64,000 nucleotides of DNA from Selaginella moellendorffii (Eukaryota > Plantae > Lycopodiophyta). Both the position numbers and the translations under genes were made by a program. The stretch spans positions 3,419,710 through 3,483,709 of the forward strand of contig NW_003314264.1 of assembly GCF_000143415.4 (NCBI RefSeq). Direction: 5' to 3'. The notes beneath the pieces are model-generated. The model saw only the letters and a program-made list of their open reading frames with translations. It was not told the origin of the DNA and made no database searches. Below, one piece after another: positions 1-55,578 of this stretch. Within the stretch, counting starts at the first letter, position 1. Each line of letters begins with the position of its first letter.

Positions 1-694
1 GGAGATGGAGCCGCAGGGATTCAAGCCGGAGCTCGTCACACTCGTCAACCTCCTCACCGCGAGCTGCTGCTTGGGCGATTTGAGCCGGGGGAAAGCAATG
101 CATTCCCGGATAATCGACGACAAGCTGGAGCTCACGCTCGTTGCCGAGAACGCCATCGTCAACATGTACGCCAAGTGTGGGAGCCTCGCGCAGGCGAAGC
201 TCGCGTTCGATGGGATGATCCACCCGAGGGACGTGATCAGCTGGAACGCGATCATAGCTGGGAATGCCGAGAACGGTGGCACCGAGACCTCGCTCCAGCT
301 CGCCAAGGACATGGTTCTCGACGGCGTGGCGCCCGACGCGACGACTTTCACCTGCGTGCTGCTGTGCTGCAGCCATGGAGGGCGGCTGGAGCAAGGTAGG
401 AGCTACTTCCTCTCCATGGTTTCGGATTTCCAGCTCTCACCATCGTCTGCGCATTACCAGAGCCTGATCGATCTGCTGGGACGGGCCGGGCGGCTCGAGG
501 AAGCGGAGGAGCTTATGAGCGTGATGCCATACCAGCCAGGAGTTGCGGGAGTGCGAGCTTACCTGGGGGCCTGCCGGACGCACTTTGACGAGGAGAGAGG
601 ATCGTCTGCTGGAGAGCTCGCCTGGGAGATGTACCCCGACGATCCCTCCAGCTACGTCCTCACGTCAAACATCGTTCGCAATACCGCGGTATGA
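1..694 (+). CDS. PLS-class PPR protein with E domain, 3' part only (begins before the window)
   Basis: NAIVNMYAKCGSL..AFDGM..RDVISWNAIIAG, CSHGG, HYQSLIDLLGRAGRLEEAEEL..MPYQP, YLGAC, SSYVLTSN are terminal PPR and E-domain motifs; stop at 692-694. Confidence 0.9.
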   Translation, partial: EMEPQGFKPELVTLVNLLTASCCLGDLSRGKAMHSRIIDDKLELTLVAENAIVNMYAKCGSLAQAKLAFDGMIHPRDVISWNAIIAGNAENGGTETSLQLAKDMVLDGVAPDATTFTCVLLCCSHGGRLEQGRSYFLSMVSDFQLSPSSAHYQSLIDLLGRAGRLEEAEELMSVMPYQPGVAGVRAYLGACRTHFDEERGSSAGELAWEMYPDDPSSYVLTSNIVRNTAV

Positions 695-1741: not shown

Positions 1742-3817
1742 ATGGAAGTTGTGATCGAATTTGGGAAGCACAAGGGCCAGAAGCTTGGAGAAATTCCTCT
1801 TGGCTATCTTCGCTGGGTATCGACTAAAATGGCGAACGAGAAGATCGGGAAGATCGCAATGGAAGCTCCCCGGCAGCGGCAGATCTCGACCCCATCGCGG
1901 GTGCCAGTAGAGCAACAATCGCCAGCGCCAGGTGATCTCTTGATCTCGATCCCAGGTGATCAAGATCATGAAATCCAGCTGCGCCGCGGGCGTCATGTCC
2001 AAGAACGCACAGGGGTCGTCGAATTCGCGAGCGTGGATCTGTGCGTCTCTGCACTGCGAGGCTTCAGCGGCGGGATCGTCGAAGCCCGGGTTCTGGAGGA
2101 GCGCGTCATCTCCAGCGCTAGAGTGTTCGCAGCAAATCGCCGCTACTTGTCCAACCTCCTGCTGCTCGCCTATGGCAAATGCGGCGGGGGCGTGAGCGAC
2201 GCAGTCCGGATCTTCACGGCGATGAGCAGCAAGGATCACTACTCGTGGAACACCATGCTCAAGGTCTTTCTCGACAACCATCTCTGGCTGGAAGCGGAGA
2301 GGCTCTTCAACGAGATGGCACCTGGAGTGGCCAACTGCATCGCTTGCACCGCGATGATCTCTCTGTATTCTTCGCAGGGGAGAGTGGCGGACGCTTGCGC
2401 AGCCTTCGATCGCATTCTTTCGCCGGACACGACTGCATGGAACGCCTTGATGGCGTGCTTCATGAGGAACGAGGTCTCCACTGATGCCCTCACTGCGTGT
2501 TTCGAGCGAATTCCCCACAAGGATCAAGTATCATGGAACCTTCTCCTTGCAGGGCTGGGGAGAGCTGGGCATCTCGCATTCCAGAAGATGCCCGTGTGGG
2601 ATTTGGTTGCCCTCAACACTTTGGTCGAGAAGAGGGGAGCTGCCGGCGAGAGGGCGAGAGAAGAATCGTGTGATCTGCGTGCCAGCGAGAAGGACATCGT
2701 CTCCTGGGCTCTCCTCCTGCGCGAGTATGCCCACAATGGGCAGCTCGAGGAGCTCGGCACCTGCTTTTTCAAGATGCCGTGCCACAACGAGGTGGTGGCA
2801 ACGCTGGTGCCATCCGCCTTTGGCAAGCAGGGATACGTGGAAGCGGCAAAGGCCGTGTTTGATCGAGTGCAGGGCTTTGGATCGTGGACCGCGCTCGTCA
2901 CGGCAAATTCCCACGCTGGAGAGCTTGGCGAGGCGGAAAAGGTTTTCTACCTCATGCCAATGTGGGGCATAGAATCGTCTACTGCGATTATGTCCGTGTA
3001 TGCAAGAAACGATGTGGTGGACAAGTGCGACTGGGTGTTTTCCGATCTCATGCAACACCGTGACGCCACCACCTGGACCGTGCTCATTGCCGCATATGCT
3101 CACTCAGGATATTATGTCTGCGCGCGTTCCGTTTTGGAGAGGATGCCGATGGCGGAGCTCACGAGCTGGAATGCAATGCTCAACTCGGAAAGAGAGGATC
3201 ATCTAATGGAACTGTTCAACGAAATGCCGGAGCGCGACATAAACTCCTGGACTCTCATGGTGTCTGCATTTGCCAAGCGCAGGGACATGTCTACTGCGCT
3301 GAAGCTTCTGGATCTGTGCCCGGCGTGGGCAGCCAGCGTCTGGAACGCGGTGATTTCTGGATATGGACGCCATGCTTGCGTTGAAGAGGCAGTGGGGACG
3401 TTTTTCAAGATGCTACTTGACGGTGTGGAGCCCGATTCCGTCACCTTCGTCTGTCTGTTGGGAGCGATGAGCTTTGCTGGAGATCTGGAGAAGGTGAGGG
3501 CATGGTTCCTGGTTCTGCGGGACTTTGATATTGAAGAGGAGAGGAGGCACTACTACTGTGTGATTGGTGCGCTTGCTCGAGCAGGCAGGGTGAGCGAAGC
3601 TGAAGAACTCCAGGAAGCCATGCCCTTCACTGCCGATACGGGCACCATGTTTGCTCTACTAAATGCGAGCAAGCTCGAGGGTGACCGTAAGGGTGCTTCG
3701 AAGGCAGCTCGGAAAGTGATGAGCCTGAAGTCAAGTAACACTGAAGTTGTCATGGCCAACATCTTGCTCAGTCACGCCAACAAAGGGCGCGTGACGTTCA
3801 GTTTTCGTGCTGGATGA
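1742..3817 (+). CDS. PLS-class PPR protein with degenerate E domain and an N-terminal FGKHKG..YLRW (DUF3820/ExoX-C-like) module
   Basis: 691-aa intronless ORF; starts MEVVIEFGKHKGQKLGEIPLGYLRWV; PPR repeats (DHYSWNTMLKVF, DIVSWALLLREYAHNG); HYYCVIGALARAGRVSEAEEL..MPF; no DYW. Confidence 0.85.
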   Translation: MEVVIEFGKHKGQKLGEIPLGYLRWVSTKMANEKIGKIAMEAPRQRQISTPSRVPVEQQSPAPGDLLISIPGDQDHEIQLRRGRHVQERTGVVEFASVDLCVSALRGFSGGIVEARVLEERVISSARVFAANRRYLSNLLLLAYGKCGGGVSDAVRIFTAMSSKDHYSWNTMLKVFLDNHLWLEAERLFNEMAPGVANCIACTAMISLYSSQGRVADACAAFDRILSPDTTAWNALMACFMRNEVSTDALTACFERIPHKDQVSWNLLLAGLGRAGHLAFQKMPVWDLVALNTLVEKRGAAGERAREESCDLRASEKDIVSWALLLREYAHNGQLEELGTCFFKMPCHNEVVATLVPSAFGKQGYVEAAKAVFDRVQGFGSWTALVTANSHAGELGEAEKVFYLMPMWGIESSTAIMSVYARNDVVDKCDWVFSDLMQHRDATTWTVLIAAYAHSGYYVCARSVLERMPMAELTSWNAMLNSEREDHLMELFNEMPERDINSWTLMVSAFAKRRDMSTALKLLDLCPAWAASVWNAVISGYGRHACVEEAVGTFFKMLLDGVEPDSVTFVCLLGAMSFAGDLEKVRAWFLVLRDFDIEEERRHYYCVIGALARAGRVSEAEELQEAMPFTADTGTMFALLNASKLEGDRKGASKAARKVMSLKSSNTEVVMANILLSHANKGRVTFSFRAG

Positions 3818-10941: not shown

Positions 10942-12630
10942 TTAACCAACGCAAAGATTTGAGAATACAACATACGAGGCAGGATTATCATCGTGCTCTT
11001 GTTCTAGTGAAACCCTTATCATCTCCCCTTGAACTCTACAAGCGCCAGCCACACTTCTCCAGCTCACAGCATCGGGCTCAAATGGCATGCCGTGGAAGAG
11101 CTCCTCGGCACGCTCCAGCTGCCCGGCCCGAGCCAGGACATCGATCACGATCATGTAGAGCTCGGGAGTGAGAAAGATTCCATCGTAGTCACTAGCTATG
11201 GTCGCAAAACAGTGACATGCTACTTCCACCATGCCTGCGTGACTACACGCACATAGAACACTGACAAAGGTCGAATCTATGGGAGAAATCCCGTCGAGGA
11301 TCATCAACGCAAACAGCCACAGCGTGTCGAGAGCTCCACCGCTTGCGGCATGAGCAGCGATCAGGGCATTCCACGAGACGGCATCACGATGGAGGTCGTG
11401 GACGAAGAAGAGATCTCTCGCCACCTCCAGCTTCCCACATTTCGCATACATATCAAGAACGGCGGTTCTCATCGACAGATCGGTGTCGAGTTTCTGTTCC
11501 ACGATCTCTTCGTGGATGATTCTTCCCACGGATAGCGATGGAATGCTCGCGCAGGAGTTGAGAGCTGCGAGAATCGCTATGTGGTCGATCCTAACACCCT
11601 CGAGATCCATCGCGAGAAACAGCCAGAGAGCTTGCTCGTGATGCCCGTTCCGGGCATAAGCGTGGATCATTGCAGTCCAGCCCACTGGATCATTGGATTG
11701 AAATGAGCAAAAGAACTCCCGCGCTTTCTCAAGATTTCCATTGTCGGAGTAGCCTCCCAGCATAACAGTGCACGAAACATCGTCTTGCTCGGGCATTCTA
11801 TCGAATATCCTCCTCGCCATAGCCACATTTCCGTTCCTGGCGTAGGCTTGGAGCATCCCAGTCCAGGACACGATATCTCTCCGCGGGATCTCATCGAACA
11901 GAGCTTTCGATTCCTCGATCCGGCCCTGGCGTCCCAGTTCCTGGAACAAATCCATCCATGCCAGTGCATCCCTTTGGGGGATTCTGCGGAAGAGCTCCTT
12001 CGCTTGCTCGAGCTTACCCTCTTTGGTCAACCCAGCCAGCACCGTGTTCCACGACACGAAATCTCGCCCTGCCATCTCGCCAAGCAGCAAATCCATTGCG
12101 ATCGAGGCGTGGCCGTGCTGCGCATACGCCGAGATAACAGTATTGAGCGAAATCACATCAGGTTTCTCGATCCTGGCGAAGATCTTTGCAGCGCTCTCGA
12201 CATGCCCTCGCTGGGCATACGCAGCGAGCATGATATTCCAAGAAACGTTGTCGCGATCCGGGATCTGGTCGAAGCAGTGCCTGGCTTGGACGAGATCGTT
12301 GCTTTGGACAAATGCCCGGATCATCGTGTTCCACGAAACCACATTTCGATGTGGCATTCGATCAAAGGCCTCCTCTCCTCTGCGACAGTGCCCTCTCTGG
12401 GCATTTGCCGTGACCATAATATTCCAGGAGTAAATATTTCGCTGGGAGATGCGATCGAAGGCGAGTCGAGCTTGATCCAGGCAGCCGCACTGCGCATACA
12501 TGGCGACGAGGAGATTCCCAATGAGAGTATTGCGATCGGCGCCATCTCTCTTAAGCTGCGAGTGGAGGCGCTTGCCCTCGAGCAATGCCCTGCTAGCAGC
12601 ATACTGGCGAACAAGAGAGGCGGCATTCAT
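10942..12630 (-). CDS. PLS-class PPR protein (tandem S-motif array, shortened E domain)
   Basis: 562-aa ORF; ~31-aa repeats (RNIYSWNIM, RNVVSWNTM, RDNVSWNIM, RDIVSWTGM); CACSHAG; IDVLARAGQLERAEEL..MPFEPD; ASYVVFSN. Confidence 0.9.
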   Translation of the reverse strand: MNAASLVRQYAASRALLEGKRLHSQLKRDGADRNTLIGNLLVAMYAQCGCLDQARLAFDRISQRNIYSWNIMVTANAQRGHCRRGEEAFDRMPHRNVVSWNTMIRAFVQSNDLVQARHCFDQIPDRDNVSWNIMLAAYAQRGHVESAAKIFARIEKPDVISLNTVISAYAQHGHASIAMDLLLGEMAGRDFVSWNTVLAGLTKEGKLEQAKELFRRIPQRDALAWMDLFQELGRQGRIEESKALFDEIPRRDIVSWTGMLQAYARNGNVAMARRIFDRMPEQDDVSCTVMLGGYSDNGNLEKAREFFCSFQSNDPVGWTAMIHAYARNGHHEQALWLFLAMDLEGVRIDHIAILAALNSCASIPSLSVGRIIHEEIVEQKLDTDLSMRTAVLDMYAKCGKLEVARDLFFVHDLHRDAVSWNALIAAHAASGGALDTLWLFALMILDGISPIDSTFVSVLCACSHAGMVEVACHCFATIASDYDGIFLTPELYMIVIDVLARAGQLERAEELFHGMPFEPDAVSWRSVAGACRVQGEMIRVSLEQEHDDNPASYVVFSNLCVG

Positions 12631-21050: not shown

Positions 21051-22132
21051 CCAAAAGTTATAGATGGTATTCATTATGAAATGATCAAACCAATTATATA
21101 TATCATTCTCAGAATTTTTATGGAAAAAATCTAGATGGATGCGAGGATTAGCAGCAAAGATAAAAAAGATGCACTATATGCCATGAAATCTACTACCAAT
21201 TAAGTTTGATTATTCAATTGCAACTATACAACATTGAATCATTGCACCAATTGTTACTCTAAAATCAAAGAAGAAGGATATGATTAGTATGCTACTTTAC
21301 TATGAAAATGAACAAAAAGAAAAAAAGTAAAAGAGAAGAAACAAATAGTCAAATCATATTTCAATTGCTATAAAAGTGATGTCTATGTGTATTCATTTGG
21401 ATGGCTTTTATAAGCTCTATCACATTATAATAAGAGCTGCCCCTTAACTCTAACAATATGAATGTATAGAATATTGAAATATGTATATTCAATTAGCCTT
21501 AAAACCCTAGAAGAGTATTATCATGTTAATAATAATATATTCTCACAGTTTGAATTTATAATAATATTTAACTGAAAAACCTAGAAATAATTATGAAATA
21601 AAACTAAAATAAAAAATAAAACAAAAAATATGTTATAAGTGTTGAATGAAAAGTCAATATAAACACCAACTAATAGTTTATATTCATTTATTTCATATTT
21701 TATCGTTTAATAATGAATTCAGATATAATAACTAAAAGTGGTAGGTAAATAAAAAATTGGGTTAGATGAATATATCTAATTGCAAATAGATAAGTATTTC
21801 GTATATAAAATCTATATATTATGTAATAATTTAAATAAATTTTATTATTATATTTTGTTTCTACTTGATCAAAGATATATAATATCCTCAAAAATACAAA
21901 AAAATTGCACTATAAATACTACAACAAACTGAGTAATTTTATAGAAGTCACAAATCAGGAAAAAAAAAAAAAGACTTAATAAGAACAAAATATTAGAGGA
22001 ATAGACATGGTTTATTTTGTAATGGACAAAAATATAATCTAATTTTGATTATTAAACTATCTTGTGTTGTTATATACTATCATATATTATTTTAATATAA
22101 CTGCATTTTTGTAAATATAAATATGAGTAAAG

Positions 22133-24799
22133 CTACCAAATGTTTTTGCAAGAGCAAACACCACCTACAAACCTGTGAATCCTGTTGGCATCCTTCACAA
22201 CAATCTCTCGTCCAACAACCTTGGACAAAAACTGGGTTGCGTCATGGCAGTCATAACACATTCTCAAATTCTTGGTCACCTCAACTTTGGTCCCAGGCTG
22301 CGTAGAAATGAAAGCGTAACCAAGCGCAAGCTTCTCACTGTGGCGGCACAGAAGCTCCTCTTTCGCTCTCTCCTCATCGCCGTCATCTCCCAGCATCGTC
22401 ACCACATTAGTATTTGGAACATAGCCAGCCTCTCTCATGAGTACTTCCAGCCTCGCAAGCTCCTTGTGAACGTTCTCGATTTGGGGATGCGAGGTATCCC
22501 CAACAACGAATCTATGAAGCTTGCCTCCGACCCTCACCCGGCTTACCCCTGGAATCCGCTTCACGTTTCTCGTCAACATCATCTCCTTGACAAGTTTTAC
22601 ATCGTCTTCGTTTCCATCCCCACTGCTAAGAGTGTTGGCCAACAAGACGTGAAGAGAACCGCTTCTTGAGTCCAATTCCAGTGCTTTCTCTACCATACGC
22701 TTTGCTCTATCGCAGTCATTGAAGCTCCTGCAAGCTCCCAGAAATGCGTGCCAAGCTACCTCGTCCGGAACGAAAGGCATGTCGAGGATCAAAGCTTCGG
22801 CTTTGTCCAAGTGTCTTGCTCGCCCAAAGAGATCTATCATGCAAGTGTAGTGCCTCTCTGTAGCTTCGATCGCGTAGTCTCCCACCATCAAATGAAAGCA
22901 GTCCCTCGCGTCCATCACCTTCGCGACATGGCTAAAACCATCCAGGAGGCAAACGAACGAGACCTCGTTTACCTCAATTCCTTCCATGGATATAAACCGA
23001 AGAAGCTCCATTGACTCCCAGACCTGACCGTTTCGCGAGTATCCCGCAAGCACTGAGTTGAGCATCTCGGCTTGCCAGCACGGAGCCAACACTAAAACCT
23101 CGCAAGCTTTGCTAATTTGCCCATGTCTGGCATATGCCGCAGCGAGCAAGGTCCACGATATCGAGTTCCTCTCCATCATCCCGTCGAAAGCTTTTTTGGA
23201 ATCCAGCGGCGTAGCGTGGCTGGCGTAGCATGAAAGCATGGCGTTCCATGAAACTGTGTTTGTTTTTGCCATCTTTCTTAGAACAAGCTCGGCCATCTCG
23301 ACTTCCCCGCTCGCCACATAGGCGGAAAGAAAAACCGTCCAGAGAACGACATCCCGCTGCTCAGCATAAAAGAATCTTTCTTTGATTATATTCATGCTAT
23401 CTCTTCCGGTGATCTCGACTATGCGCGTAGTACACGCCGTTGCATCCCATTGCGGCATCAAATAGAAGACCCTTTCCGCTTCAACAAAATCCCCAGCATT
23501 GGTATTTGCAGTGACGAGCAAAGTCCACATTGCTACACACCTCTTGGGGGCAATATCAAATGTTTCTTTGCACTCAATTGCGCAGCCATGCCTGGCCAAA
23601 GCTCCTAACAAAACAATGTACGCCACAGTGTCGTGTAGAGGCATCAACCAAAACGCTTTGCTCGTTTCGTCCACGAATCCATTGTGAGCGTATCCACGCA
23701 ACAGCACCGTCCACAAGATCAAATTCCACTCGAGGCTACTGTCAAAAACCACCTTTGCTTGTTCCATCTCGCCAGCCTTCCCATAAGCATCAACGATTGC
23801 CGCTAAGTTGGCGGTGTTTATCTGCGGCATTTTGTCCAAGACGCTGGCCGCAGCATTTGAATCCCCTGCTCTGGAGAAGGCATTGAGCAAGGAATTAAAC
23901 GAGACTATCGATCTGCCACCTTGCATGTCATCGAACTTTCTCTTGGCATCTGCGTCGTCGTGCGAAGGGCATGAGTTCCAAGAGACGGTGTCCCACTCGG
24001 GCATCTTGGCGAAAACGTTTCGGGCATCTTCGTCCTGCCCGGCTCTCGCCAGAGCCGCGAGGATCGTGTTCCAGGACACCATATCCCTCTTCCCTTCCAT
24101 CCTCTCGAAGCAATCCATGGCTTCTTGGACGCGGCCACACTTGGAGTAGCAACTCACGAGCGCGTTCCACGCGACAGTGTCGACTTCTCGCGAGGAGATC
24201 CGATCGAACGCCGCCTTTGCATCCTCGGGCTTGCACTGCTCGGCAAAGACCCCGATCATGGCCGTGCAAGAGATCTTGTTGGCCACCACCCCCTCGTCCT
24301 CCATCTCGCGGAAGAGCTCCTGGGCATCGCTCCACTTTCGATTGTCGAGAAAGACCTTGAGCATGGTGTTCCACGAGTAGTCGTCCCGGGAAGCCATGCT
24401 CGCGAACACTCTGTGAGCTTCGGCGACGCCCTGGCACCTCGCAAACATGAGGATGATGAGATTGGAGAGGTATCTCTTGTTGGCCGAGAACACGGTGCCA
24501 CTGGCGAGCACCCGGCGATGGAGAGCCTCGGCCTCACTCAGCCCACCACGAAAGCTTCTCAGCGTCGAGATACAATCCTCCGCTCGCGCGAACGCGGGCT
24601 CCCCGCGGACGACGTTGCGTGAACTTCCTCCGAGCTCGCGATCGCTAGGAGGAATGTTAGTAATTTCTTCTAGAACTTGCCGGGCCATCGCGCCGATCTT
24701 CTCGTCCTTCATCTTGTCACACATCCAGCGCAGGTAGCTTTCTGGTACTTCCAAGAGGGACTTACCCTTGTGCTTCCCGAACGGCAGGATCGTGTGCAT
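22133..24799 (-). CDS. PLS-E-DYW-type PPR protein with an N-terminal FGKHKG..YLRW (DUF3820/ExoX-C-like) module
   Basis: 888-aa intronless ORF; starts MHTILPFGKHKGKSLLEVPESYLRWM; PPR array; E domain; PGVS box, HRFVVGDTSHPQ, GYVP, HSEKLA, KNLRMCYDCH, terminal CSCKNIW. Confidence 0.92.
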   Translation of the reverse strand: MHTILPFGKHKGKSLLEVPESYLRWMCDKMKDEKIGAMARQVLEEITNIPPSDRELGGSSRNVVRGEPAFARAEDCISTLRSFRGGLSEAEALHRRVLASGTVFSANKRYLSNLIILMFARCQGVAEAHRVFASMASRDDYSWNTMLKVFLDNRKWSDAQELFREMEDEGVVANKISCTAMIGVFAEQCKPEDAKAAFDRISSREVDTVAWNALVSCYSKCGRVQEAMDCFERMEGKRDMVSWNTILAALARAGQDEDARNVFAKMPEWDTVSWNSCPSHDDADAKRKFDDMQGGRSIVSFNSLLNAFSRAGDSNAAASVLDKMPQINTANLAAIVDAYGKAGEMEQAKVVFDSSLEWNLILWTVLLRGYAHNGFVDETSKAFWLMPLHDTVAYIVLLGALARHGCAIECKETFDIAPKRCVAMWTLLVTANTNAGDFVEAERVFYLMPQWDATACTTRIVEITGRDSMNIIKERFFYAEQRDVVLWTVFLSAYVASGEVEMAELVLRKMAKTNTVSWNAMLSCYASHATPLDSKKAFDGMMERNSISWTLLAAAYARHGQISKACEVLVLAPCWQAEMLNSVLAGYSRNGQVWESMELLRFISMEGIEVNEVSFVCLLDGFSHVAKVMDARDCFHLMVGDYAIEATERHYTCMIDLFGRARHLDKAEALILDMPFVPDEVAWHAFLGACRSFNDCDRAKRMVEKALELDSRSGSLHVLLANTLSSGDGNEDDVKLVKEMMLTRNVKRIPGVSRVRVGGKLHRFVVGDTSHPQIENVHKELARLEVLMREAGYVPNTNVVTMLGDDGDEERAKEELLCRHSEKLALGYAFISTQPGTKVEVTKNLRMCYDCHDATQFLSKVVGREIVVKDANRIHRFVGGVCSCKNIW

Positions 24800-25055
24800 T
24801 CCTTCGCAGAGATCAAGGAAAAAATGAAACTATAGCCATCAAGAACCCTAAACTCTCGTTCCATTCAAACATTTCTTTCTAGAGGGGGATTCTTCCTTTT
24901 CTACTCTACTTGGATCGTTCTTGGCTGTGGTCTGGCAGGATCGTGTGCATTCCTTCGCAGAGATCAAGGAAAGAATGAAACTATCAAGAACCCTAAATTC
25001 TCGTTCCATCTTTCTACAGGCTTCTCTACTCTACTTGGATCGTTCTTGGCTGTGG
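24783..25055. repeat. Imperfect tandem duplication of the sHSP-stop to PPR-start junction
   Basis: 24783-24930 and 24934-25055 both read ggcaggatcgtgtgcattccttcgcagagatcaaggaa...ctactctacttggatcgttcttggctgtgg. Confidence 0.9.
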
Positions 25056-25475
25056 CTTGGCGACCTTTGGAACCGTGACAGTGAGAACCCCATTCTCCAC
25101 TTGGGCCTTGATCCCGTCCACATTGGCATTCTCCGGCAGCCGGAATTTCCTCATGAAGCTGCCATAGCTGCGCTCCACGCGGTGCCACTTGTCGGTCTTC
25201 TGGGCCTCGTGCATCTTCCTCTCGCCACTGATCTGGAGGGTGCGCCCGTGCTCCACCGTGATCTTCACGTCCTCCTTGCTCAGCCCTGGGAGATCGGCCT
25301 TGAAGACGTGGGCGTCGGGCGTCTCGAGCCAATCCACGCGGGTGTTGGCGGCGGCGCTCGCGTCCCTGGCGACCTGCTTGGAGGGCTCGTTGCCCCCGCC
25401 GGACAAGATGGACGAGAGCTCCGGGAAGGGATCGAAGACGCCGCCATTGTCATTGCCGTAGAAGAAGAGAGCCAT
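25026..25475 (-). CDS. Class I cytosolic small heat shock protein (HSP17/18 family)
   Basis: [68 protein letters not shown]. Confidence 0.95.
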
Positions 25476-25544
25476 TGCCTCACTCTGCTTAAAACCTAGG
25501 AAAAGGAATCGCTAGAGATGAGTTCCTGAACGAGCCCTGCCTCG

Positions 25545-25616
25545 TTTTATACCATCCAGCGCTGGCAATTCTGGTAGATTCTAGGAGATTCTAAAGAGAT
25601 CTAGAAGATTCGAAAG
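25545..25616 (-). promoter_or_regulatory. TATA box plus heat-shock element array of the sHSP gene
   Basis: TATAAAA on the minus strand at about 25545-25551; TTC units at 25569, 25579, 25589 and 25609 (10-bp phase) with GAA at 25604. Confidence 0.8.
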
Positions 25617-25978
25617 CATATGCCACCAACGGACCTCAAGATATTTAAAGTGTGGATGATGGCCCTCTCATAGAAATTCTGTTTAATGATGCCTCTTGGA
25701 TTTGTTCTTGAGTAGAAACACTCCTCTTTCTTATCTATATTCTCAAGAAAGATTGGAACAAGTGTTTCTTCCTGTAAGGAGTAACTTTTCACGAACTTTT
25801 CCTTTGTTCTTACTGTATTCTTTGGAGTGAGATCTATACTTTGCACGAGTCCATGTCATGTTTCCACCCAAACGAAGATCCATCCAGATGCCATGGATAT
25901 CCATTCAGGTGGAGTAGAAAGAAGCAAAATATTATATAATGTACAGACATACACAAGCACCTGGTAATATCATCTACC

Positions 25979-30553: not shown

Positions 30554-32908
30554 ATGTGTTTGCTCAAGCTCCGAGCAGCAATCGATGGATTGGAGAACAG
30601 GCAGCGAACAGTCTTTGATCTCACATCGCATTGCGCATCGCTCCTCCAGATCTGTCGCAACGCCAAGGCGGCGGCATCGGAAGGACAGCGCCTTCACGCA
30701 GTCCTTGCTCGCTATGGGGTCGATCGATCCACCTTCCTGGGCAATCTCATCGTCCAGATGTATGGCAACTCTAGGAACCTGGCGGAGGCGTGCGCGGCAT
30801 TCGCCCAAATCGCGCAGCGCAACGAGTTCTCGTGGAACTCGCTGCTGCTGGCATTTGTGCAGAGCGGGCGTCTGGACGATGCCATGAAATCGTTCGATCG
30901 GATGCCGCAGTGGGATGAAGTTTCATACAACACGATGGTTTCTGCGTACTGCCAGATCGGACACTTGCATCTCGCAAAGGAGATGTTCGATTCCATGTCC
31001 TGCCCAGGAGTTGTGACATGGACCACCATGCTCTCAGCATATGCCCAGAACGGGCATCTTGGCGAAGCAAGAGAGCTCTTCCTCGCCATGCCCGAGAAGA
31101 ACACCGTGACTTGGAACACCATGATCCAGGCCAATCTCCGCGAGGGATTCGTCGAAGATGCCTGGTGCCTCTTCTCGGTGATGCCCTCCCGGGACGTTGT
31201 CTCTTGGAACATCGTCGTCACTGGGCTCACCCAGATCGGCGAGCACGCCGACGCCCACCTCGTCCTCGCCAAGATCCCCGCTCGGAGCATCTTCACCTGG
31301 AACGCGATGCTGTGCGCCAGCGTACACGATGGGCACCTCTCCACCGCGAGGATAATCTTCCGCGAGATGCCCGAGAGGAACACGATCTCCTGGAACGCGA
31401 TCATCACTGGGCTCGCGCACAATGGCCAGCCGCAAGAGGCCCAGGCTGCGTTTGAGGAGATGGAGAAGAGGGACGTGATCTCCTGGACGTCGCTCGTCGC
31501 CGCCTACGCACAGATCGAGCGCCTGGATCGCGCGCGCGCGCTGTTTGATCGGATGCCCGAGCAGGACGTTGTGGCCGGGAATGCGCTGCTTATGGGATAC
31601 GGGCGAGCCCGGCTGGTAGGCGAGGCTTGGGAGATCTTTAGCGCCACCCCTGCTCGAGTGAGCCTCACTTGGAACCTCATGCTCCAGGCTATGGCGGACA
31701 GCCGCTGCCACTGCGAGGACGCGCGAGAGCTCTTCGAGAAGATGGCCCGGCACAACATCGTTTCATGGACAACAATGCTTAGCTGCTACGCAGAGGGCGG
31801 TCAGGATCAATCGGCCAAAGAGATCTTCGACGCGATGCCTCAGAGGAATCTGGTTTCATGGAGCGCCATGCTGCGTGGATTTATCCAGAATGGTCATCTT
31901 GACAATGCCGTGAGAATTTTCTACAAGTCTCCAGCGAGGGATCTAGTCGCGTGGACGCTTCTTGTGAGCGCTTTTGCGGAGCGAAACGAAGTAGAAAAGG
32001 CGAAAAGTTGGTTCAAAGATATGCCACAAAAGGATCTAATTGCCTGGACCGCGATGCTCACAGCATTTGCCGTGAATGGGGATTTGGATCGCGCCTGGAA
32101 TGTGTTCCACAGGCTTCCAGCGAGGAACACGGTCGCCTGGAACGCCATGATCGCGGCTTGCGGCCAGAACAACCAGGGATCACGGAGCTTGACACTGCTG
32201 GGCTTGATGGACGTGGAAGGGATCCATCCCAGCGCGACGACTTTCATCAGCGTGGCGGACGCTTGCACGAGCCTGACGGCGCTCAAGGAAGGCCGGCTTG
32301 TCCACCAGGAGATCACGCTCGCCAGCGGCGATCTCAGCTCCTCCGAGTCTCTCGGAATCGGCAACGCGCTGGTTAGCATGTATGGCAAGTGTGGCAAGCT
32401 CGACGAGGCGCGAGAGGTGTTCGCGGGGATGATCCAGAGGAGCGATATCACCTGGAACGCGATCATCGCCGCGCACACCCAGAACCACTGCAATCTCGGC
32501 GACGTCGCGGAGCTCCTGGAGTTGATGCTTCTCGACGGCGTGGCGGTGGACGAGATCACGTCCGTGAGCGTGCTCACCGTGTGTAGCCAGGCAGGGCTTC
32601 TCCTCCACGCCAGGGAGTTCTTCCACTCGATGAGCCGCGAGTTCTCCAGCGCTCCAGGGGCGGATCACTACGCTTGCATGATCGATCTCCTCGCGCGGGT
32701 TGGCGAGCTGGAGCAGTGCATGAAGCTGATCTGCGCCATGCCTTTCCAGGCGGATGGGATCTCGTGGATGAGCCTCCTGGGCGCTTGCAAGGGATTGGGC
32801 GATCTCGAGCGAGCATTAGTGGCGGCGGAGATGGCCGTGCGCTTGAATCCCGAGAACTCGGCGGCTTACATTCTCTTCTCCAACATTCTAGAGAAGGACA
32901 AAGGATGA
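30554..32908 (+). CDS. PLS-class PPR-E protein with a long tandem S-motif array
   Basis: 784-aa ORF; many 31-aa repeats (MPEKNTVTWNTM, MPERNTISWNAI, MPQRNLVSWSAM); HYACMIDLLARVG, WMSLLGAC, AAYILFSN. Confidence 0.92.
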   Translation: MCLLKLRAAIDGLENRQRTVFDLTSHCASLLQICRNAKAAASEGQRLHAVLARYGVDRSTFLGNLIVQMYGNSRNLAEACAAFAQIAQRNEFSWNSLLLAFVQSGRLDDAMKSFDRMPQWDEVSYNTMVSAYCQIGHLHLAKEMFDSMSCPGVVTWTTMLSAYAQNGHLGEARELFLAMPEKNTVTWNTMIQANLREGFVEDAWCLFSVMPSRDVVSWNIVVTGLTQIGEHADAHLVLAKIPARSIFTWNAMLCASVHDGHLSTARIIFREMPERNTISWNAIITGLAHNGQPQEAQAAFEEMEKRDVISWTSLVAAYAQIERLDRARALFDRMPEQDVVAGNALLMGYGRARLVGEAWEIFSATPARVSLTWNLMLQAMADSRCHCEDARELFEKMARHNIVSWTTMLSCYAEGGQDQSAKEIFDAMPQRNLVSWSAMLRGFIQNGHLDNAVRIFYKSPARDLVAWTLLVSAFAERNEVEKAKSWFKDMPQKDLIAWTAMLTAFAVNGDLDRAWNVFHRLPARNTVAWNAMIAACGQNNQGSRSLTLLGLMDVEGIHPSATTFISVADACTSLTALKEGRLVHQEITLASGDLSSSESLGIGNALVSMYGKCGKLDEAREVFAGMIQRSDITWNAIIAAHTQNHCNLGDVAELLELMLLDGVAVDEITSVSVLTVCSQAGLLLHAREFFHSMSREFSSAPGADHYACMIDLLARVGELEQCMKLICAMPFQADGISWMSLLGACKGLGDLERALVAAEMAVRLNPENSAAYILFSNILEKDKG

Positions 32909-32933: not shown

Positions 32934-34895
32934 ATGGATCGAAGCGATTGCATCCGGCTGCTCGAGTCGTGCAAGAGCCTATCGCTCGCGGAGACCGCCC
33001 ATCGGCGCGTCCGCGAGGTTTATCCCGCGATCCAGGACGATGCCTTCCTCTCCAACAAGATCGTCCAGATGTATGGCCGCTGCGGGAGCGTGGATCGCGC
33101 CAGGATCGCGTTCGAGAGGAGCCAGAACAAGGATCCGAGCTCCTGGGTGTTCATGCTTTGCGCGTACTCGCAAAACGGGCACCTGGACGATGCGAAAGAG
33201 ATCTTCGACCGGATGCCGGATAGGAATCAAGTGGCCTGGACCGCGATGCTTACGGGGTACGCGCGGGTCGGGGATTTGATCGAGGCCAAGCGCGTCTACG
33301 ATCGAATGCCGGAGTGGGACGTGGTTTCTTCCACCGCGATGCTCAGAGCGTATGCCCAGAATGGGCATATTGTCAATAGTGAGAAGCTCTTTAGCGAGAT
33401 GCCGGAGAAAAATCTTGTTTCGTGGAGTGTAATGCTGGATATGTTCTCACACAACAATGATCTTGCGAAGGCGAGACTTTGTTTTGACAATATGCCTGAG
33501 TGGGATGTTGTTTCCTCGACTACAATGCTTGCAGCATATGCCCAACACGGGCAATATTATAACGCTGAAGGGGTCTTTAACTACATGGAGCACTGGACTC
33601 TAGCTACTTGTTCCACGATGCTCGCAGTTTTTGCACAGAGTTTCCAGGTAGAAGAAGCTAGAAACTTGTTCTCGAGTTTGCCGCAAAGAGATTTCGCGTC
33701 GTGGATTGCTATGTTGAACTGCTATGCTCAAGTTGGTGATGTAGACCAAGCAAAGATTGTGTTTAATCAGATGCCCGAGTGGAATCTCGCCACCTTCACG
33801 GCAATGCTGAACGCGTTTGGAGCCAATGACAAAGTTGACGATGCGAAAGTCTTGTTTGATTCCACACCCGAGCTCGACATGGTACTTTGCACTGCCATGA
33901 TCGAAGCTTATGCCCAGGCCGGGCATACCGTTCTTGCAAAACACATATTTGAACAGATGACTCAGCATGACATTGTGTCATGGAACTCGATGCTATCAGC
34001 TTACGTTAACAAAGGTGGCAGCCTCAATGGTGCTAGGGACGTGTACACTCGGATGCCGTGCTGGAGCGTAGTCACCTGGAACTTAATGTTTGTGGCATAT
34101 ACCCAGGAAGGGCATCTGGAACTGGCAAGGCTCTTGTATGAGGAGATTCCAGTCCGAAACCTAGCATCTTCAACGATTATGCTCGAAGCGTACTCAAGAA
34201 ACGGCTACATTGAAGAGGCTAGTCAAATCTTTGCACAAATGCCTGTGCAAGATCTTGTTTCTTCCACAGTCTCTATCAATCTTTCTGCCCAGTGCAAGAA
34301 TTTGTATTTGGCGAGAGAGATCTTTGAGAAAATGCCGGAGCGCAACGTTGTCTCATGGACCGCACTCTTGAACGCTTACGTTTCAAACTCCCAATTGAAC
34401 TACGCGTTGTCTTTGTTTCATACTCTCCCTTCGCATACTGTTGTAACTTGGAACACCATTGTGGCAGCGTATGCCATGAACGGGCATTCCAGTACTGCGC
34501 TCTTTCTCTTCTACTCGATGAGGATGGCAAGCGAGGCTTCACCGGATGGAATCTCGCTCTTGTCCGTTCTGGTCGCTTGCAATCACACGGGAGACTCGGA
34601 GCTCGCAAGGTCTTTGTTCGTGTCAATGTCGCTGGACTCTGGGATTGGAGCTAGCAAAGAGCACTATGGCTGTATGGTTGATGTCCTGGGAAGAGCCGGT
34701 TACCTGGACGAGGCCGAAGATCTTGTGAACAACATGCCGTTCGAGCCCGATGTTCTAGAGTGGATGAGCTTGCTTGGAGCTTGTCGAGGCTATGGCGACG
34801 CTGCTAGAGGGACCAAGATTCTGGCCCGGATTGTGGCGCTGGATCCGAGAAACGTCGCGGCGTTCGTGTATCTCGCTAGAAAAATACAAAGTTGA
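32934..34895 (+). CDS. PLS-class PPR-E protein with a long tandem S-motif array
   Basis: 653-aa ORF; MPDRNQVAWTAM, MPEWDVVSSTAM repeats; HYGCMVDVLGRAGYLDEAEDL..MPFEPD..WMSLLGAC. Confidence 0.92.
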   Translation: MDRSDCIRLLESCKSLSLAETAHRRVREVYPAIQDDAFLSNKIVQMYGRCGSVDRARIAFERSQNKDPSSWVFMLCAYSQNGHLDDAKEIFDRMPDRNQVAWTAMLTGYARVGDLIEAKRVYDRMPEWDVVSSTAMLRAYAQNGHIVNSEKLFSEMPEKNLVSWSVMLDMFSHNNDLAKARLCFDNMPEWDVVSSTTMLAAYAQHGQYYNAEGVFNYMEHWTLATCSTMLAVFAQSFQVEEARNLFSSLPQRDFASWIAMLNCYAQVGDVDQAKIVFNQMPEWNLATFTAMLNAFGANDKVDDAKVLFDSTPELDMVLCTAMIEAYAQAGHTVLAKHIFEQMTQHDIVSWNSMLSAYVNKGGSLNGARDVYTRMPCWSVVTWNLMFVAYTQEGHLELARLLYEEIPVRNLASSTIMLEAYSRNGYIEEASQIFAQMPVQDLVSSTVSINLSAQCKNLYLAREIFEKMPERNVVSWTALLNAYVSNSQLNYALSLFHTLPSHTVVTWNTIVAAYAMNGHSSTALFLFYSMRMASEASPDGISLLSVLVACNHTGDSELARSLFVSMSLDSGIGASKEHYGCMVDVLGRAGYLDEAEDLVNNMPFEPDVLEWMSLLGACRGYGDAARGTKILARIVALDPRNVAAFVYLARKIQS

Positions 34896-50927: not shown

Positions 50928-50950
50928 CGCAACCAATCCTCTGATACCAA

Positions 50951-51518: not shown

Positions 51519-54500
51519 CTATAGGGTGGTGGTGGTGTCCATAACGATCATCTCGCTCTCCAATCCACTCATATTGAAGTTGTGAGTCGACGAAGACAGA
51601 AGCCGCTCGTGATTGCTTGCCGACGTCTTGAGCAAAAGCTTCTCGTTGATCTGCCTGTTCTTCCTCCTCCCGCTGTTACAGCTCGACTCCTGGCCCATGT
51701 GGTCCTCCGACGACGACGAGCTCTTGCTGTTCTTGTGCGCAACCTCCTCGGGGACGTGCTTGATCTGCTCCAGCACCGCCACCACGTCCTTCATGCTCGG
51801 CCTTTCCACGGGCGACTCCTTCACGCACATTAGCGCGATCCCCAGGCACTGGAGCATCTCGTGGATGAAAGGATCGGGCATTCCTCGCAACCGTGAGTCG
51901 AGCGCCTCCACCCGGAGCTGGTGCTGCTGTTGCTGCTCCTCCTGCTGCCGCACCATCAGTCCGTGGACCCAATCGACGACGTTCTTGTCTTGCTCCAGTG
52001 CTCGGCGCCCGGTTAACATCTCGAGGAGGACAACGCCGTAGCTGTAGACGTCGCTCTTGGTCGTGATGTTTACCCGGCAGCTATACTCTGCAAGAAGCTT
52101 CTATTTAGAGCACGCCATTCACTGCAATAGGATGCAAAAAAGAAGCTCTAGACACTCTACACTCAAAAGCCGGCTAAAGGAAAGACTAGAGGTGTCCCAC
52201 TGTCCACCACCAACAGTGACAAAAGCTCACTCGTGAGAAAGAGAAGAGACATGTCCGTGGCAAGCAGAGAGTTCTTCCTCTCCACGCTCATCTCCTCATC
52301 AAATCATCACCAACATCGGCCCGAGACGAATAAGATCACACTTTTCTTCCCTGGCAGCAGGCACCACCAAGCTACGAAGCCATGATGGCAAACTCCGAAC
52401 AATCTCACGCTCGCACTCAAATGCCCACCTCATTTTAAATCACAAATGAAATCCCCGGTTGGGGCATCTATCCGCACGGCAGCTCTAACAACAAACACAA
52501 ACAAGAAAAAGGTGGCGGACATGAATTGGATCGCAAGCCAATGAAACCAAAATCACCACTCGCAACTCCACGACAAACAGCGCAAGGAAGCACACTCTCA
52601 TGGAAAAGCCACAAGCAAGCAAACCGGTATGTCCAAGCCGGGCATATGAAGCAAGAGAGAAAGATCGATGAACTTACCAGGAGCAATGTAGCCAGTGGTG
52701 CCCGGGATCTTCCCCGGGTACACGAAATCCTCCTCGGCGAGCACCTTGGCCAGCCCAAAATCCGCAATGTAAGGCTCCAGCGAGTCGCCCAGCAGGATAT
52801 TGTTGGCCTTGATGTCCCTGTGCAAGATTGGCGGGTTGCAATCGTGGTGGAGGTACGCGATCCCCTGCGCCGCGCCCAGCGCGATCTTGTACCGCAGCTC
52901 CCAGTCGAGGGAGCGCTTCTTGTCCGCGTCGTGGAGCAGCTCCTCGAGGTTGCCATTGCTCTTGAAATCGTAGAGCAGCAGCGCCGTCTTGGTGTTCGTG
53001 CAGTAGCCAATGAGCCGGACGATGTTCTTGTGCCGGACCTTGGATCCCAGCGTGTGGACCTCCGAGTTGAAGCTCGCGCGGTTGGCGCTGGCTCTCCTGC
53101 TGCTGCTGAAATCGATCTCCTTGATCGCGATCTCGTTCCCATCCGGCAGCTTCGCTTTAAACACCGATCCGGAGCTCCCTCTGCCGATTGGCACCGCATT
53201 GCCGAAGCTTTCCACCACGTCCGAGGCGGAGATGCTCGGGTTCCACTTCTGGTATGGCGTCATCTGCCACAGCCACGGGCTACCGCGGGCGGCACTGTCC
53301 GAGAAGCCGCGGCACCGGCGGTACAGAAGGACCGAGCCCAGCAGCACGACCAGCGCGGTACCGCCGAAGAGCAGCGCCACCACCACGGGGGGCCGCATGG
53401 ACCGCCGTACGGGCGACCCGGGGCCGTCCGTACCGCACTGTGGGCCGTCGAGCGTGCCGCGCGACACGCCCGACATGGCGCATAGCTGGCGGTTGCCCGC
53501 GAAAGAGACGGCCATGTTGCGGAAGGCATCGGTGGATGGGATGATGCCCGTGAAGGAGTTGTAGGAGACGTTGAGGAAGTTGAGGTTGGCGAGCTTGTCA
53601 AGGAGCTGGACGCCGCCAAAGAGATTGTTGTGCGCGAGATCGAGGCGGACGAGGTGCGTGAGATCGGCGAATCGCTCCGGGATGGATCCCGTGAGGGAAT
53701 TGGAGTGGAGGTCGAGCGCGATGGAGAGGCTGACCAGCCCACCCAGCGTCGCCGGGATCTCCCCGGACAGCCTGTTGTTGGCGAGCTCCAGCGAGAGGAG
53801 CTGCTTGCACAGGCCGAGATCGTCCGGGATCTTCCCCGTCAATCGATTGTTCGAGAGCTTGAGGTACTCGAGCGCTTGCATGTCGCCGATCTGCGGCGGG
53901 ATCTTTCCCTCGAGCTGGTTGGAGGAGGCGTCGAGCAGCTGGAGCGCCCGCAGCCGGCCCAGCGACGCGGGCACCGGGCCCGTGAGCTCGTTCTTCACCA
54001 GGATCAAGCTCTGCAGCGACATGAGGCTGCCAATCTCCTCGGGGATCTCCCCACTCAGCCCGTTCCCCTCGAGGTCGAGGAATGTGAGATTCCGGAGGCT
54101 CCCCAGGCTCCTGGGGATGCCGCCCACGAGGAGATTCTCCTTGACGCGCAGCCGGACGAGCACGGAGTCGGTGACGCCCACCTCGGGCAGCACCCCGGAC
54201 AGCCGGTTGTGGATGAGCAGCAGCCGCTCCAGCGATGGCAGCGAGAAGATCTTGGGCGGGATGGGCCCCGAGAGGCGATTGTAGGAGAGATCGAGCGTCT
54301 TGAGCTGGGAGCAATTGACGATGCTGTCCGGGATCGGGCCCTCGAGCTGGTTCTCCCAGCAAAAGAGGAGCTGGAGATTGGCGAGGCGGCCGATGGAGTC
54401 GGGCAGGGGGCCGGAGAGCCGGTTGGTGTCGAGCTCCAGCACCACGAGCTCCGTGCAGTCGCCAAACTCGGGCGGTATGCTGCCCGTGAGGTTGTTGATA

Positions 54501-55507: not shown

Positions 55508-55578
55508 GCTGCCCGAACTGATCAAATTTTGCTCCCTCACATTGTAGATGGCTCCGTAATCGCTGGAGCAAATTCACA

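What the first reader, a model, noticed from the sequence alone, without database searches (positions are those of the whole stretch)
22133..24799. PPR-DYW deaminase whose N-terminus is a bacterial/phage-type FGKHKG..YLRW module instead of a transit peptide
Seen: the ORF begins MHTILPFGKHKGKSLLEVPESYLRWMCDKMKDEKIG and runs uninterrupted through a PLS PPR array, an E domain and a DYW-type domain with HSE and CxxC zinc ligands intact (ends NIW). Established knowledge: the PFGK(H/Y)KG-x6-P-x2-YLxW pattern characterises the small DUF3820/QSregVF_b and ExoX C-terminal module, known mainly from bacteria and phages, alone or attached to DNA-processing enzymes. PLS-DYW proteins are normally organelle-imported C-to-U editors with an N-terminal targeting peptide. 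Inference: a folded, charged module at residue 5 leaves no room for a presequence, so this may be a cytosolic/nuclear editor or a PPR with an extra nucleic-acid or protein-docking domain. I do not know a description of this architecture, but I could not search.
Basis: partly seen in the sequence, partly recalled or inferred. Interest (0 to 1): 0.88.

Follow-up and report, generated by a model that had tools for sequence, protein, structure and literature searches.

The report
Spikemoss RNA editor with bacterial-type add-on
A spikemoss (Selaginella moellendorffii) gene for an otherwise ordinary organelle-type RNA editing enzyme (PPR-DYW) really does begin with a small folded module otherwise seen mostly in bacteria and phages, and it belongs to a small family of such genes, but what the module does and where the protein works remain untested.

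Summary
Window 22133-24799 (minus strand) is one uninterrupted 888-codon ORF. It encodes an N-terminal QSregVF_b/DUF3820 module (aa 1-47; Pfam 33.5 bits against a cut-off of 22), a roughly 25-residue disordered linker, about 19 PPR motifs, E1/E2, and an intact DYW deaminase ending in NIW.

The genome is Selaginella moellendorffii. Both haplotypes keep the 888-aa ORF. RNA contigs cover the gene without splice joints, and an in-frame stop lies 10 codons upstream of the ATG.

The fusion is a family trait. A DYW-less paralogue in this window (1742-3817) and a third locus with two tandem modules (XP_024516766.1) share it. On a tree built without the module they group together, which fits one old acquisition. 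This scan had already noted both relatives (s1-344466, s1-334588).

The predicted module fold matches E. coli YpeB and the ExoX C-terminus. No solved structure exists. Elsewhere the module is attached to exonucleases, SNF2 helicases and an Mgm101 homologue.

The inference "no transit peptide, hence cytosolic" is not supported. Neighbouring PPR ORFs also lack visible presequences, and localisation could not be tested. The most likely reading is a sequence-specific C-to-U editor with an accessory docking or nucleic-acid-contact module.

I found no paper describing this architecture, although RefSeq models already carry it. I rate it a new variant of a known kind, of moderate interest.

The parts
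22133..24799 (-). Whole intronless ORF (888 codons plus stop) of the module-PPR-E-DYW gene
   Evidence: both haplotypes keep an intact 888-aa ORF; RNA contigs cover about 22062-24812
24659..24799 (-). N-terminal QSregVF_b/DUF3820 module, aa 1-47 (beta bridge, then helices 20-29 and 33-47)
   Evidence: Pfam 33.5 bits against cut-off 22; AF2 pLDDT about 90 for aa 1-40; fold match to YpeB and the ExoX C-terminus
24581..24658 (-). Linker, aa 48-73, predicted disordered and not conserved between paralogues
   Evidence: pLDDT 37-57 for aa 50-70; no conservation in the alignment with the paralogue
22763..24580 (-). PPR tract, aa 74-679: about 19 motifs, mostly 31-aa S-type, one degenerate 27-aa motif (aa 271-297), terminal P2-L2-S2
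22559..22762 (-). E1/E2 motifs, aa 680-747
   Evidence: Pfam E_motif 42.4 bits; helices 680-743
22136..22558 (-). DYW cytidine deaminase domain, aa 748-888, with PG box, HSE, CxDCH and CSC kept; C-terminal NIW
   Evidence: Pfam 1.7e-31; aligned to 9kfx (2e-48) and 7o4e (1.3e-29)
24783..25061 (-). Tandem duplication of about 151 bp, specific to this haplotype, covering the sHSP 3' end, the spacer and the first 17 nt of the PPR CDS
   Evidence: absent from the other haplotype; an RNA contig of run X1 skips exactly 151 nt
24906..24950 (-). Upstream copy of the start codon opening a 14-codon uORF (MHTILPDHSQERSK*), present only in the duplicated haplotype
   Evidence: read
25026..25475 (-). Upstream same-strand small heat-shock protein gene (HSP20). 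Its stop is 226 nt before the PPR ATG here and 107 nt before it in the other haplotype.
1742..3817 (+). Paralogue (691 aa) with the same N-terminal module (aa 1-47 = 1742-1882), a PPR tract and no DYW domain
   Evidence: present in RNA runs

Best explanation
This is a genuine, expressed, intronless nuclear gene of Selaginella moellendorffii. It encodes a PPR-E1-E2-DYW protein, the kind of enzyme that binds one RNA sequence through its PPR tract and deaminates a nearby cytidine to uridine. Its N-terminus carries one folded DUF3820/QSregVF_b module of about 47 residues (YpeB / ExoX C-terminal type), tethered by a disordered linker of about 25 residues. Shown here: the architecture, its expression as RNA, intact catalytic motifs, and conservation of the module in at least three diverged paralogous loci that group together on a tree. 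One of those loci has two modules and one has no DYW domain. Inferred: the PPR tract and DYW domain do the usual sequence-specific C-to-U editing. The module, placed at the end of the protein that faces the 5' side of the bound RNA, would act as an accessory element that contacts nucleic acid or docks a partner protein. This would mirror what it presumably does on the exonucleases, SNF2 helicases and Mgm101 homologue to which it is attached elsewhere. The compartment is not determined. An organelle remains the default because every characterised plant PPR-DYW editor works there.
For: The ORF and domains are real. The organism and allele are identified: the other haplotype, XP_002971768.2, is 98% identical over 888 aa and has one conservative change in the module. 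RNA contigs from four runs in four studies cover 22062-24812 at depth 9-16, the flanks 21900-22028 and 25512-25750 have zero depth, and no splice joint enters the 5' end. Run X6 has zero depth at 24867-25124 while the PPR is covered up to 24809. PPR depth stays at 9-16 while sHSP depth ranges from 13 to 647. Both point to a separate transcription start close to the ATG. An in-frame stop lies 10 codons upstream. The paralogues share 45% identity in the module against 35% overall, and the identical positions are the family's near-invariant ones: F7, G8, K9, G12, P19, Y22, W25. The third locus, P0121, has two modules. A tree built without the module, linker and DYW puts the five module-bearing rows on one side of a branch (SH-aLRT 87) inside a Selaginella-only group (98). 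AF2 gives a confident module, a disordered linker and a PPR solenoid. The fold matches YpeB, ExoX 170-218 and Dictyostelium Mgm101 homologue 330-375. Elsewhere the module is fused to RNase_T exonucleases, SNF2/Helicase_C, SAP, a Pol III epsilon-like protein and NUMOD4.
Against: No function is known for the module in any organism. ExoX truncated to residues 1-167, which lacks it, retains exonuclease activity (PMC3753628), and there is no solved structure. The accessory docking or nucleic-acid-contact role is therefore guilt by association. The N-terminal 40 residues hold 5 acidic residues and are predicted folded, which is unlike a classical transit peptide, so organellar location is not assured. 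The ATG is only 107 nt (226 nt in this haplotype) after the stop of a strongly expressed sHSP gene, and one RNA contig bridges both genes, so the real transcript structure and translation efficiency are not settled. Logan contigs show presence, not absence, and a rare spliced isoform could be missed. The tree samples only about 14 Selaginella PPRs out of thousands.
Confidence: 0.6

Rival explanations
1. Non-organellar editor. The module replaced the targeting peptide, so this subfamily acts on cytosolic or nuclear RNA, or even on DNA-associated substrates.
For: The module begins at residue 2-11 in all three loci. The first 40 residues are folded and hold 4-5 acidic residues. No upstream exon appears in RNA contigs and there is an in-frame stop upstream. 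The module's usual partners are DNA enzymes.
Against: Other PPR ORFs in the same window also lack any visible presequence, so the absence is uninformative in this genome. The module occurs in a protein named as a mitochondrial Mgm101 homologue. No localisation predictor or experiment was available. To my knowledge (memory), no nucleo-cytosolic DYW editing is known in land plants.
Confidence: 0.15
2. Heat-coupled or bicistronic expression. The PPR is mainly made from read-through of the upstream sHSP transcript, so the editor is heat-induced. In this haplotype the duplicated junction adds a decoy uORF that damps translation.
For: The sHSP stop is only 107 nt (226 nt here) upstream on the same strand. 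A 1071-nt RNA contig in X1 runs from the PPR CDS into the sHSP CDS, and X5 shows unbroken depth across the spacer. The uORF can be read.
Against: PPR depth is flat (9-16) while sHSP depth varies about 50-fold between runs. X6 covers the PPR 5' end but has zero depth at 24867-25124. Overlapping UTRs alone would give a bridging contig. The paralogue at 1742 has no sHSP upstream, and P0121 follows a different gene. Downstream ORFs of bicistronic mRNAs are rarely translated in plants (general knowledge).
Confidence: 0.15
3. The module is a neutral passenger or is not translated: translation starts at a later Met, or the gene is decaying.
For: The PPR tract has one degenerate 27-aa motif and two low-confidence stretches. 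The old JGI model omitted the N-terminus. The function of the module is unknown.
Against: The module is better conserved than the rest of the protein across paralogues at 35% identity, and it is conserved at the family's invariant positions. The next Met after the module is M118, inside the PPR tract. Both haplotypes are intact, with 3 synonymous changes to 1 non-synonymous change in the module. One paralogue even duplicated the module.
Confidence: 0.07
4. Assembly or annotation artefact, or bacterial contamination joined to a plant gene.
For: The module's nearest single-domain relatives are metagenomic, phage or bacterial.
Against: The same junction is present in two haplotype scaffolds, in RNA contigs of four independent studies, and in two further paralogous loci.
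Confidence: 0.01

Closest known systems
Canonical plant PPR-E-DYW C-to-U RNA editing factors (solved DYW domains: OTP86/At3g63370, PDB 7o4e; synthetic PPR-DYW, 9kfx)
   Same: It has a PPR tract with terminal P2-L2-S2, E1/E2, and a DYW deaminase domain with the PG box, HSE, CxDCH and CSC retained. The matches are 2e-48 to 9kfx and 1.3e-29 to 7o4e. It is an intronless gene in a lineage with massive PPR expansion (PMC13386178).
   Different: It carries a folded DUF3820 module at the extreme N-terminus where a targeting peptide is normally expected. The tract is mostly 31-aa S-type motifs. The C-terminal tripeptide is NIW, not DYW.
DUF3820 / QSregVF_b proteins (E. coli YpeB) and the ExoX C-terminal module (PF12843, PF20600)
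   Same: It has the FGKHKG...P..YL.W motif, a profile match above the PF12843 cut-off, and a predicted fold that superposes on YpeB (TM 0.68, 40% identity) and on ExoX 170-218.
   Different: Those are small stand-alone bacterial or phage proteins, or C-terminal tails and arrays on DNA enzymes. Here a single copy sits N-terminal to an RNA-binding, RNA-editing protein in a land plant. PF20600 is below its cut-off for this protein.
PPR proteins with accessory catalytic or binding domains (PPR-SMR; PRORP = PPR + NYN)
   Same: The logic is the same: a PPR RNA-recognition tract combined with an unrelated add-on domain. A PRORP-like ORF lies in this very window (58168-60567).
   Different: In those proteins the add-on is C-terminal and catalytic, and its role is known (general knowledge). 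Here it is N-terminal, tiny, of unknown function, and additional to the DYW catalytic domain.
Eukaryotic proteins that carry the same module (Dictyostelium Mgm101 homologue; fungal 4-module protein from Elasticomyces; SNF2+SAP helicase)
   Same: The same module is appended to nucleic-acid-handling proteins in eukaryotes.
   Different: Their partners are DNA enzymes, the module is C-terminal or in arrays, and none is a PPR or a deaminase.

Membership tests
PLS-class PPR-DYW RNA editing factor | Tandem PPR motifs ending in P2-L2-S2 | tested here: met
   Pfam PPR 233 bits with 11 stretches; about 19 helix pairs at aa 73-679 in the AF2 model; motif parse gives 35/36/32-aa terminal motifs
PLS-class PPR-DYW RNA editing factor | E1/E2 motifs between the PPR tract and DYW | tested here: met
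   PF20431 E_motif 42.4 bits against cut-off 27.3, aa 693-755
PLS-class PPR-DYW RNA editing factor | DYW deaminase domain with zinc-binding HxE and CxxCH and a second CSC site | tested here: met
   PF14432 E 1.7e-31; HSEK, CYDCH and CSC align with 9kfx and 7o4e
PLS-class PPR-DYW RNA editing factor | C-terminal D-Y-W tripeptide | tested here: not met
   The protein ends NIW, so only the W is kept. Paralogue P0121 ends DFW. I recall that variants of the tripeptide occur in active editors, but this was not tested here.
PLS-class PPR-DYW RNA editing factor | N-terminal organelle targeting peptide / organellar location | not testable with these tools
   No predictor or localisation data were available. 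The N-terminus is a folded module with 5 acidic residues in the first 40. Neighbouring PPR ORFs also lack a visible presequence.
PLS-class PPR-DYW RNA editing factor | Site-specific C-to-U editing activity | not testable with these tools
   The PPR code could be read, but no Selaginella organelle sequence or assay was available.
QSregVF_b / DUF3820 (PF12843) | Profile match above the curated gathering score | tested here: met
   28.2 bits in the whole protein and 33.5 bits for aa 1-70, against cut-off 22
QSregVF_b / DUF3820 (PF12843) | Conserved F-G-K-x-K-G ... P-x-x-Y-L-x-W signature | tested here: met
   G8 and Y22 are invariant, and F7, K9, G12, P19 and W25 are at least 90% conserved, in a 90-sequence alignment
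QSregVF_b / DUF3820 (PF12843) | Fold shared with named members (YpeB, ExoX C-terminus) | tested here: met
   Model against model only: YpeB TM 0.68, rmsd 1.5, 40% identity, probability 1.00; ExoX 170-218 probability 0.95. No experimental structure exists.
ExoX-like_C (PF20600) | Profile match above the curated gathering score | tested here: not met
   20.8 bits against cut-off 26.5 for this protein. Paralogue P0121 passes at 38.2 bits. The two Pfam families overlap on the same module.

The most novel reading that the evidence does not exclude
The module gives a DYW deaminase a second address. It would tether a subfamily of Selaginella editors to a partner outside the classical organellar editing setting, for example cytosolic or nuclear RNA, or the organellar nucleoid and DNA-processing machinery. 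It would do this through the same unknown interaction that recruits exonucleases, SNF2 helicases and Mgm101 in bacteria, phages and protists. That would be both the first functional handle on DUF3820 and a new mode of targeting for plant RNA editing.
Probability: 0.12. Interest if true: 0.85.

Novelty: new variant of a known kind. Interest (0 to 1): 0.55.

Why it matters
PPR-DYW proteins are the self-contained C-to-U editors of plant organelles and are being engineered as programmable RNA base editors. Almost all known diversity lies in the PPR tract and the C-terminal E/DYW part, so an N-terminal folded add-on that has been kept for a long time in a subfamily is unusual. Selaginella has extreme editing, with thousands of sites (my recollection), and has no MORF helpers (stated in PMC13386178). 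An alternative accessory element in this lineage is therefore plausible and testable. For the bacterial and phage field, DUF3820/YpeB/ExoX-C is a widespread module with no known function or structure. A eukaryotic fusion to an RNA enzyme with a predictable RNA target offers a tractable system for finding out what the module binds.

Tried and rejected
- Word-indexed protein searches restricted to the N-terminal region found only the query (aa 1-80 of this protein; aa 1-110 of P0121). The tool is too insensitive for a 40-residue module at a database size of 5.8 billion, so these blanks say nothing about other species.
- A sequence search of PDB with the module profile gave no credible hit. Foldseek against PDB gave nothing below E 1.
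- Literature searches found nothing relevant. 'DUF3820' plus 'pentatricopeptide' gave 0 papers. 'DUF3820' alone gave 4 irrelevant papers. 'QSregVF'/'PPR' and 'quorum-sensing-regulated virulence factor'/'plant' were uninformative. The 2026 kingdom-wide survey of editing factors does not mention the module, and its supplements are not held.
- I recalled that the ExoX C-terminus binds MutL. The papers I could read did not support this, so I dropped it.
- I considered that contigs ending at 24809/24812 mark the transcription start. I rejected this for X5, because that is exactly where a 31-mer de Bruijn graph must branch at the 151-bp repeat. The X6 gap at 24867-25124 is the better, though still weak, evidence for a nearby start.
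- I considered stop-codon read-through from the sHSP. Several stops lie between the two ORFs, so I rejected it.
- I looked for DYW remnants downstream of the DYW-less paralogue and found none.
- I could not retrieve the two AFDB cluster hits that I believe are plant proteins (A2XCA8, A9NZD5; organism masked). Whether the module came from an endogenous plant gene or by horizontal transfer is therefore unresolved.
Full report
OBSERVATION

Pfam finds PPR repeats (233 bits, 11 stretches), the E motif (aa 693-755, 42.4 bits against cut-off 27.3) and a full DYW_deaminase domain (aa 792-888, E 1.7e-31). At aa 2-41 it finds QSregVF_b PF12843, at 28.2 bits in the whole protein and 33.5 bits (E 3.9e-8) when aa 1-70 are scanned alone. 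The curated cut-off is 22. The related ExoX-like_C model stays below its cut-off, at 20.8 against 26.5. The C-terminal 144 residues align end to end with the solved synthetic PPR-DYW (9kfx, 2e-48) and with OTP86 (7o4e, 1.3e-29), and HSE, CxDCH and CSC are all kept.

ORGANISM AND GENE MODEL

The closest database entries are Selaginella moellendorffii. SELMODRAFT_79750 is an old, truncated model of this same gene, with artificial gaps and no N-terminus. The other haplotype encodes XP_002971768.2, also 888 aa, which is 98% identical and has a single A37T change in the module.

The reading frame is closed by a stop 10 codons upstream of the ATG. RNA-derived contigs from four runs of four different studies cover about 22062 to 24812. 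The flanks at 21900-22028 and 25512-25750 have zero depth, so the signal is RNA and not contaminating DNA. The only joint reported is a 151-nt skip. That skip is not an intron. It removes one copy of a tandem duplication that the other haplotype lacks.

Contigs that stop at 24809/24812 in X5 do so exactly where a 31-mer graph must branch at that repeat, so they do not mark a transcription start. Two other observations point to a separate start close to the ATG rather than obligatory read-through from the upstream sHSP. Run X6 covers the PPR 5' end but has zero depth over 24867-25124. PPR depth stays at 9-16 while sHSP depth ranges from 13 to 647. These are contig data, which show presence and not absence, so a rare spliced form cannot be excluded.

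A FAMILY, NOT A ONE-OFF

A second PPR ORF 20 kb away (1742-3817, plus strand, 691 aa) starts MEVVIEFGKHKGQKLGEIPLGYLRWVSTKMANEKIG. It is 35% identical to the first over its whole length and 45% identical in the module, while the linker is not conserved. It has no DYW domain and there is no remnant of one downstream. It is present in RNA runs.

I built an HMM from the two modules and searched 1.84 billion representative proteins. This gave 1722 hits. The top hit is a third S. moellendorffii gene, XP_024516766.1, a 751-aa PPR-E-DYW protein with two tandem modules at aa 8-38 and 64-103. It is encoded without an intron, 106 nt after another PPR-DYW gene.

I then built a maximum-likelihood tree from the PPR/E part only, with the module, linker and DYW removed. 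The five module-bearing rows (three loci plus two alleles) fall on one side of a branch (SH-aLRT 87) inside a Selaginella-only group (98), with terminal branches of about one substitution per site. This fits one old acquisition followed by retention. The positions identical between paralogues are the near-invariant positions of the whole DUF3820 family: F7, G8, K9, G12, P19, Y22 and W25. Between the two haplotypes the module has three synonymous changes and one non-synonymous change. The module is therefore translated and under constraint. The caveat is that only about 14 of the several thousand Selaginella PPRs were sampled.

WHAT THE MODULE IS

With a 90-sequence alignment, AlphaFold2 predicts aa 1-47 confidently (pLDDT about 90). 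The fold is a short beta bridge around the FGKHKG loop followed by two helices, at 20-29 and 33-47.

In the full-length model the module is followed by a low-confidence linker (aa 50-70, pLDDT 37-57). After that come a PPR superhelix from aa 73 to 743 and a well-formed DYW domain. Weak spots lie at aa 270-294, a degenerate 27-residue motif, and at aa 455-480.

No solved structure resembles the module, by sequence or by fold. Among predicted structures, the best matches are:
- E. coli YpeB (40% identity, TM 0.68, rmsd 1.5)
- the C-terminal 50 residues of exonuclease X
- the C-terminus of a Dictyostelium protein named as an Mgm101 mitochondrial genome maintenance homologue

AFDB clusters add DUF3820 proteins and fusions to a Pol III epsilon-like protein, SAP and NUMOD4 domains. 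ESM Atlas neighbours are phage and bacterial QSregVF_b clusters. Among the long hits of the HMM search, the module occurs in arrays of 2 to 8 copies and on RNase_T exonucleases, SNF2/Helicase_C proteins and a fungal protein. The closest single-module relatives, up to about 59% identical over 39 residues by my count on the sequences, are unnamed metagenomic proteins.

The module's function is unknown everywhere. ExoX truncated to residues 1-167, which lacks it, still has activity (PMC3753628).

HOW IT MOST LIKELY WORKS

What is shown is an intact, expressed PPR-E-DYW protein with a conserved, flexibly tethered N-terminal DUF3820 module.

What is inferred is the rest. From established knowledge of PPR-DYW proteins, the PPR tract reads one RNA sequence. 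The fifth and last residues of motifs 2-19 give approximately U, Y, G, U, U, Y, Y, ?, G, ?, G, G, A, Y, ?, Y, ?, G. The DYW domain then deaminates a C a few nucleotides downstream.

From its position at the 5'-facing end, its basic GKHKGK loop with conserved aromatic residues, and its recurrent attachment to nucleic-acid enzymes, I infer that the module is an accessory contact. It may contact nucleic acid directly or dock a partner protein. I put about 0.6 on this overall picture. Confidence is much higher, about 0.9, that the fused protein is real.

THE TRANSIT-PEPTIDE INFERENCE

It is true that the first 40 residues are folded and hold five acidic residues, and that no upstream exon is seen.

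However, three other PPR ORFs in this window also begin almost directly in their first PPR motif, so a missing visible presequence is not distinctive in this genome. The module is also found in a protein named as a mitochondrial factor. No localisation tool was available. A cytosolic or nuclear location therefore remains a minority possibility, at about 0.15, and is not a conclusion.

COMPARISON WITH WHAT IS KNOWN, AND NOVELTY

The protein meets every sequence-level criterion of a PPR-DYW editing factor except the terminal DYW tripeptide, which is NIW here. It meets the profile, motif and predicted-fold criteria of PF12843, but not the gathering score of PF20600.

The architecture exists in RefSeq models and in precomputed Pfam tables, and the scan's first-stage readers had flagged the two relatives (s1-344466, s1-334588). 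I found no paper that describes it. 'DUF3820' plus 'pentatricopeptide' gave no papers, and the 2026 kingdom-wide survey of editing factors does not mention it.

I rate it a new variant of a known kind. It is of moderate interest to PPR and RNA-editing specialists, and to anyone trying to assign a function to DUF3820.

LIMITS

- I could not search other lycophyte, fern or hornwort genomes for the fusion. The word-indexed searches were blank for technical reasons.
- I could not retrieve two AFDB hits that I believe, from their accession ranges only, to be rice and spruce proteins. The source of the module, an endogenous plant gene or horizontal transfer, is therefore open.
- I could not predict targets, because no Selaginella organelle sequence was available.

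Noticed in passing
window 24783-25061 (minus-strand gene junction): This haplotype carries a tandem duplication of about 151 bp covering the sHSP 3' end, the spacer and the first 17 nt of the PPR CDS. The other haplotype (L001) has a single copy with a 107-nt spacer. The upstream copy opens a 14-codon uORF (24950-24906, MHTILPDHSQERSK*). Both forms are seen in RNA contigs: X5 carries the duplicated form and X1 the single-copy form.
   Followed up: partly
window 25026-25475 (-), with a TATA-like 'tataaaa' near 25545: An HSP20-family small heat-shock gene lies directly upstream on the same strand. Its RNA depth ranges from 13 to 647 between runs while the PPR stays at 9-16. Whether the two genes share transcripts was not resolved.
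   Followed up: partly
L002 1587-2894 and 3001-5256 (GL377644.1): The two-module paralogue XP_024516766.1 starts 106 nt after the stop of another, shorter PPR-DYW gene (435 aa, ending ENNW) on the same strand. This mirrors the very short upstream spacer of the window gene.
   Followed up: no
window 22133-24799 compared with P0002 (SELMODRAFT_79750) and P0273 (SELMODRAFT_95554): The original JGI models of this gene and its allele (661 and 708 aa) are truncated at the N-terminus. The 661-aa model also has internal pieces removed, so surveys based on those models would miss the module.
   Followed up: partly
window 271-297 aa region = about 23909-23989 (-): One PPR motif is shortened to 27 residues (TVSWNSCPSHDDADAKRKFDDMQGGRS) and has low model confidence (pLDDT 42-59). 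It may form a gap or kink in the RNA-binding surface.
   Followed up: no
window 58168-60567 (+): This 800-aa ORF has a strong match to the PPR region of PRORP (PF17177, 217 bits) and is possibly a proteinaceous RNase P gene.
   Followed up: no
window 47955-50936 (-) and 52601-55540 (-): The first is a Ty3/gypsy-type retrotransposon polyprotein ORF (gag, protease, RT, RNase H). The second is an LRR receptor-like kinase ORF.
   Followed up: no
window 5-694, 10945-12630, 30554-32905, 32934-34892: These are four further PPR ORFs without DYW domains; only one DYW domain exists in the whole window. The three whose N-termini were read (10945-12630, 30554-32905, 32934-34892) start within 0 to about 22 residues of the first PPR motif, with no obvious targeting peptide.
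   Followed up: partly
window 22169-24737, RNA against reference: There are many single-base differences between the RNA contigs and the window (up to 18 per 911 nt). They match the other haplotype or strain variation rather than any editing pattern. This was not analysed further.
   Followed up: no
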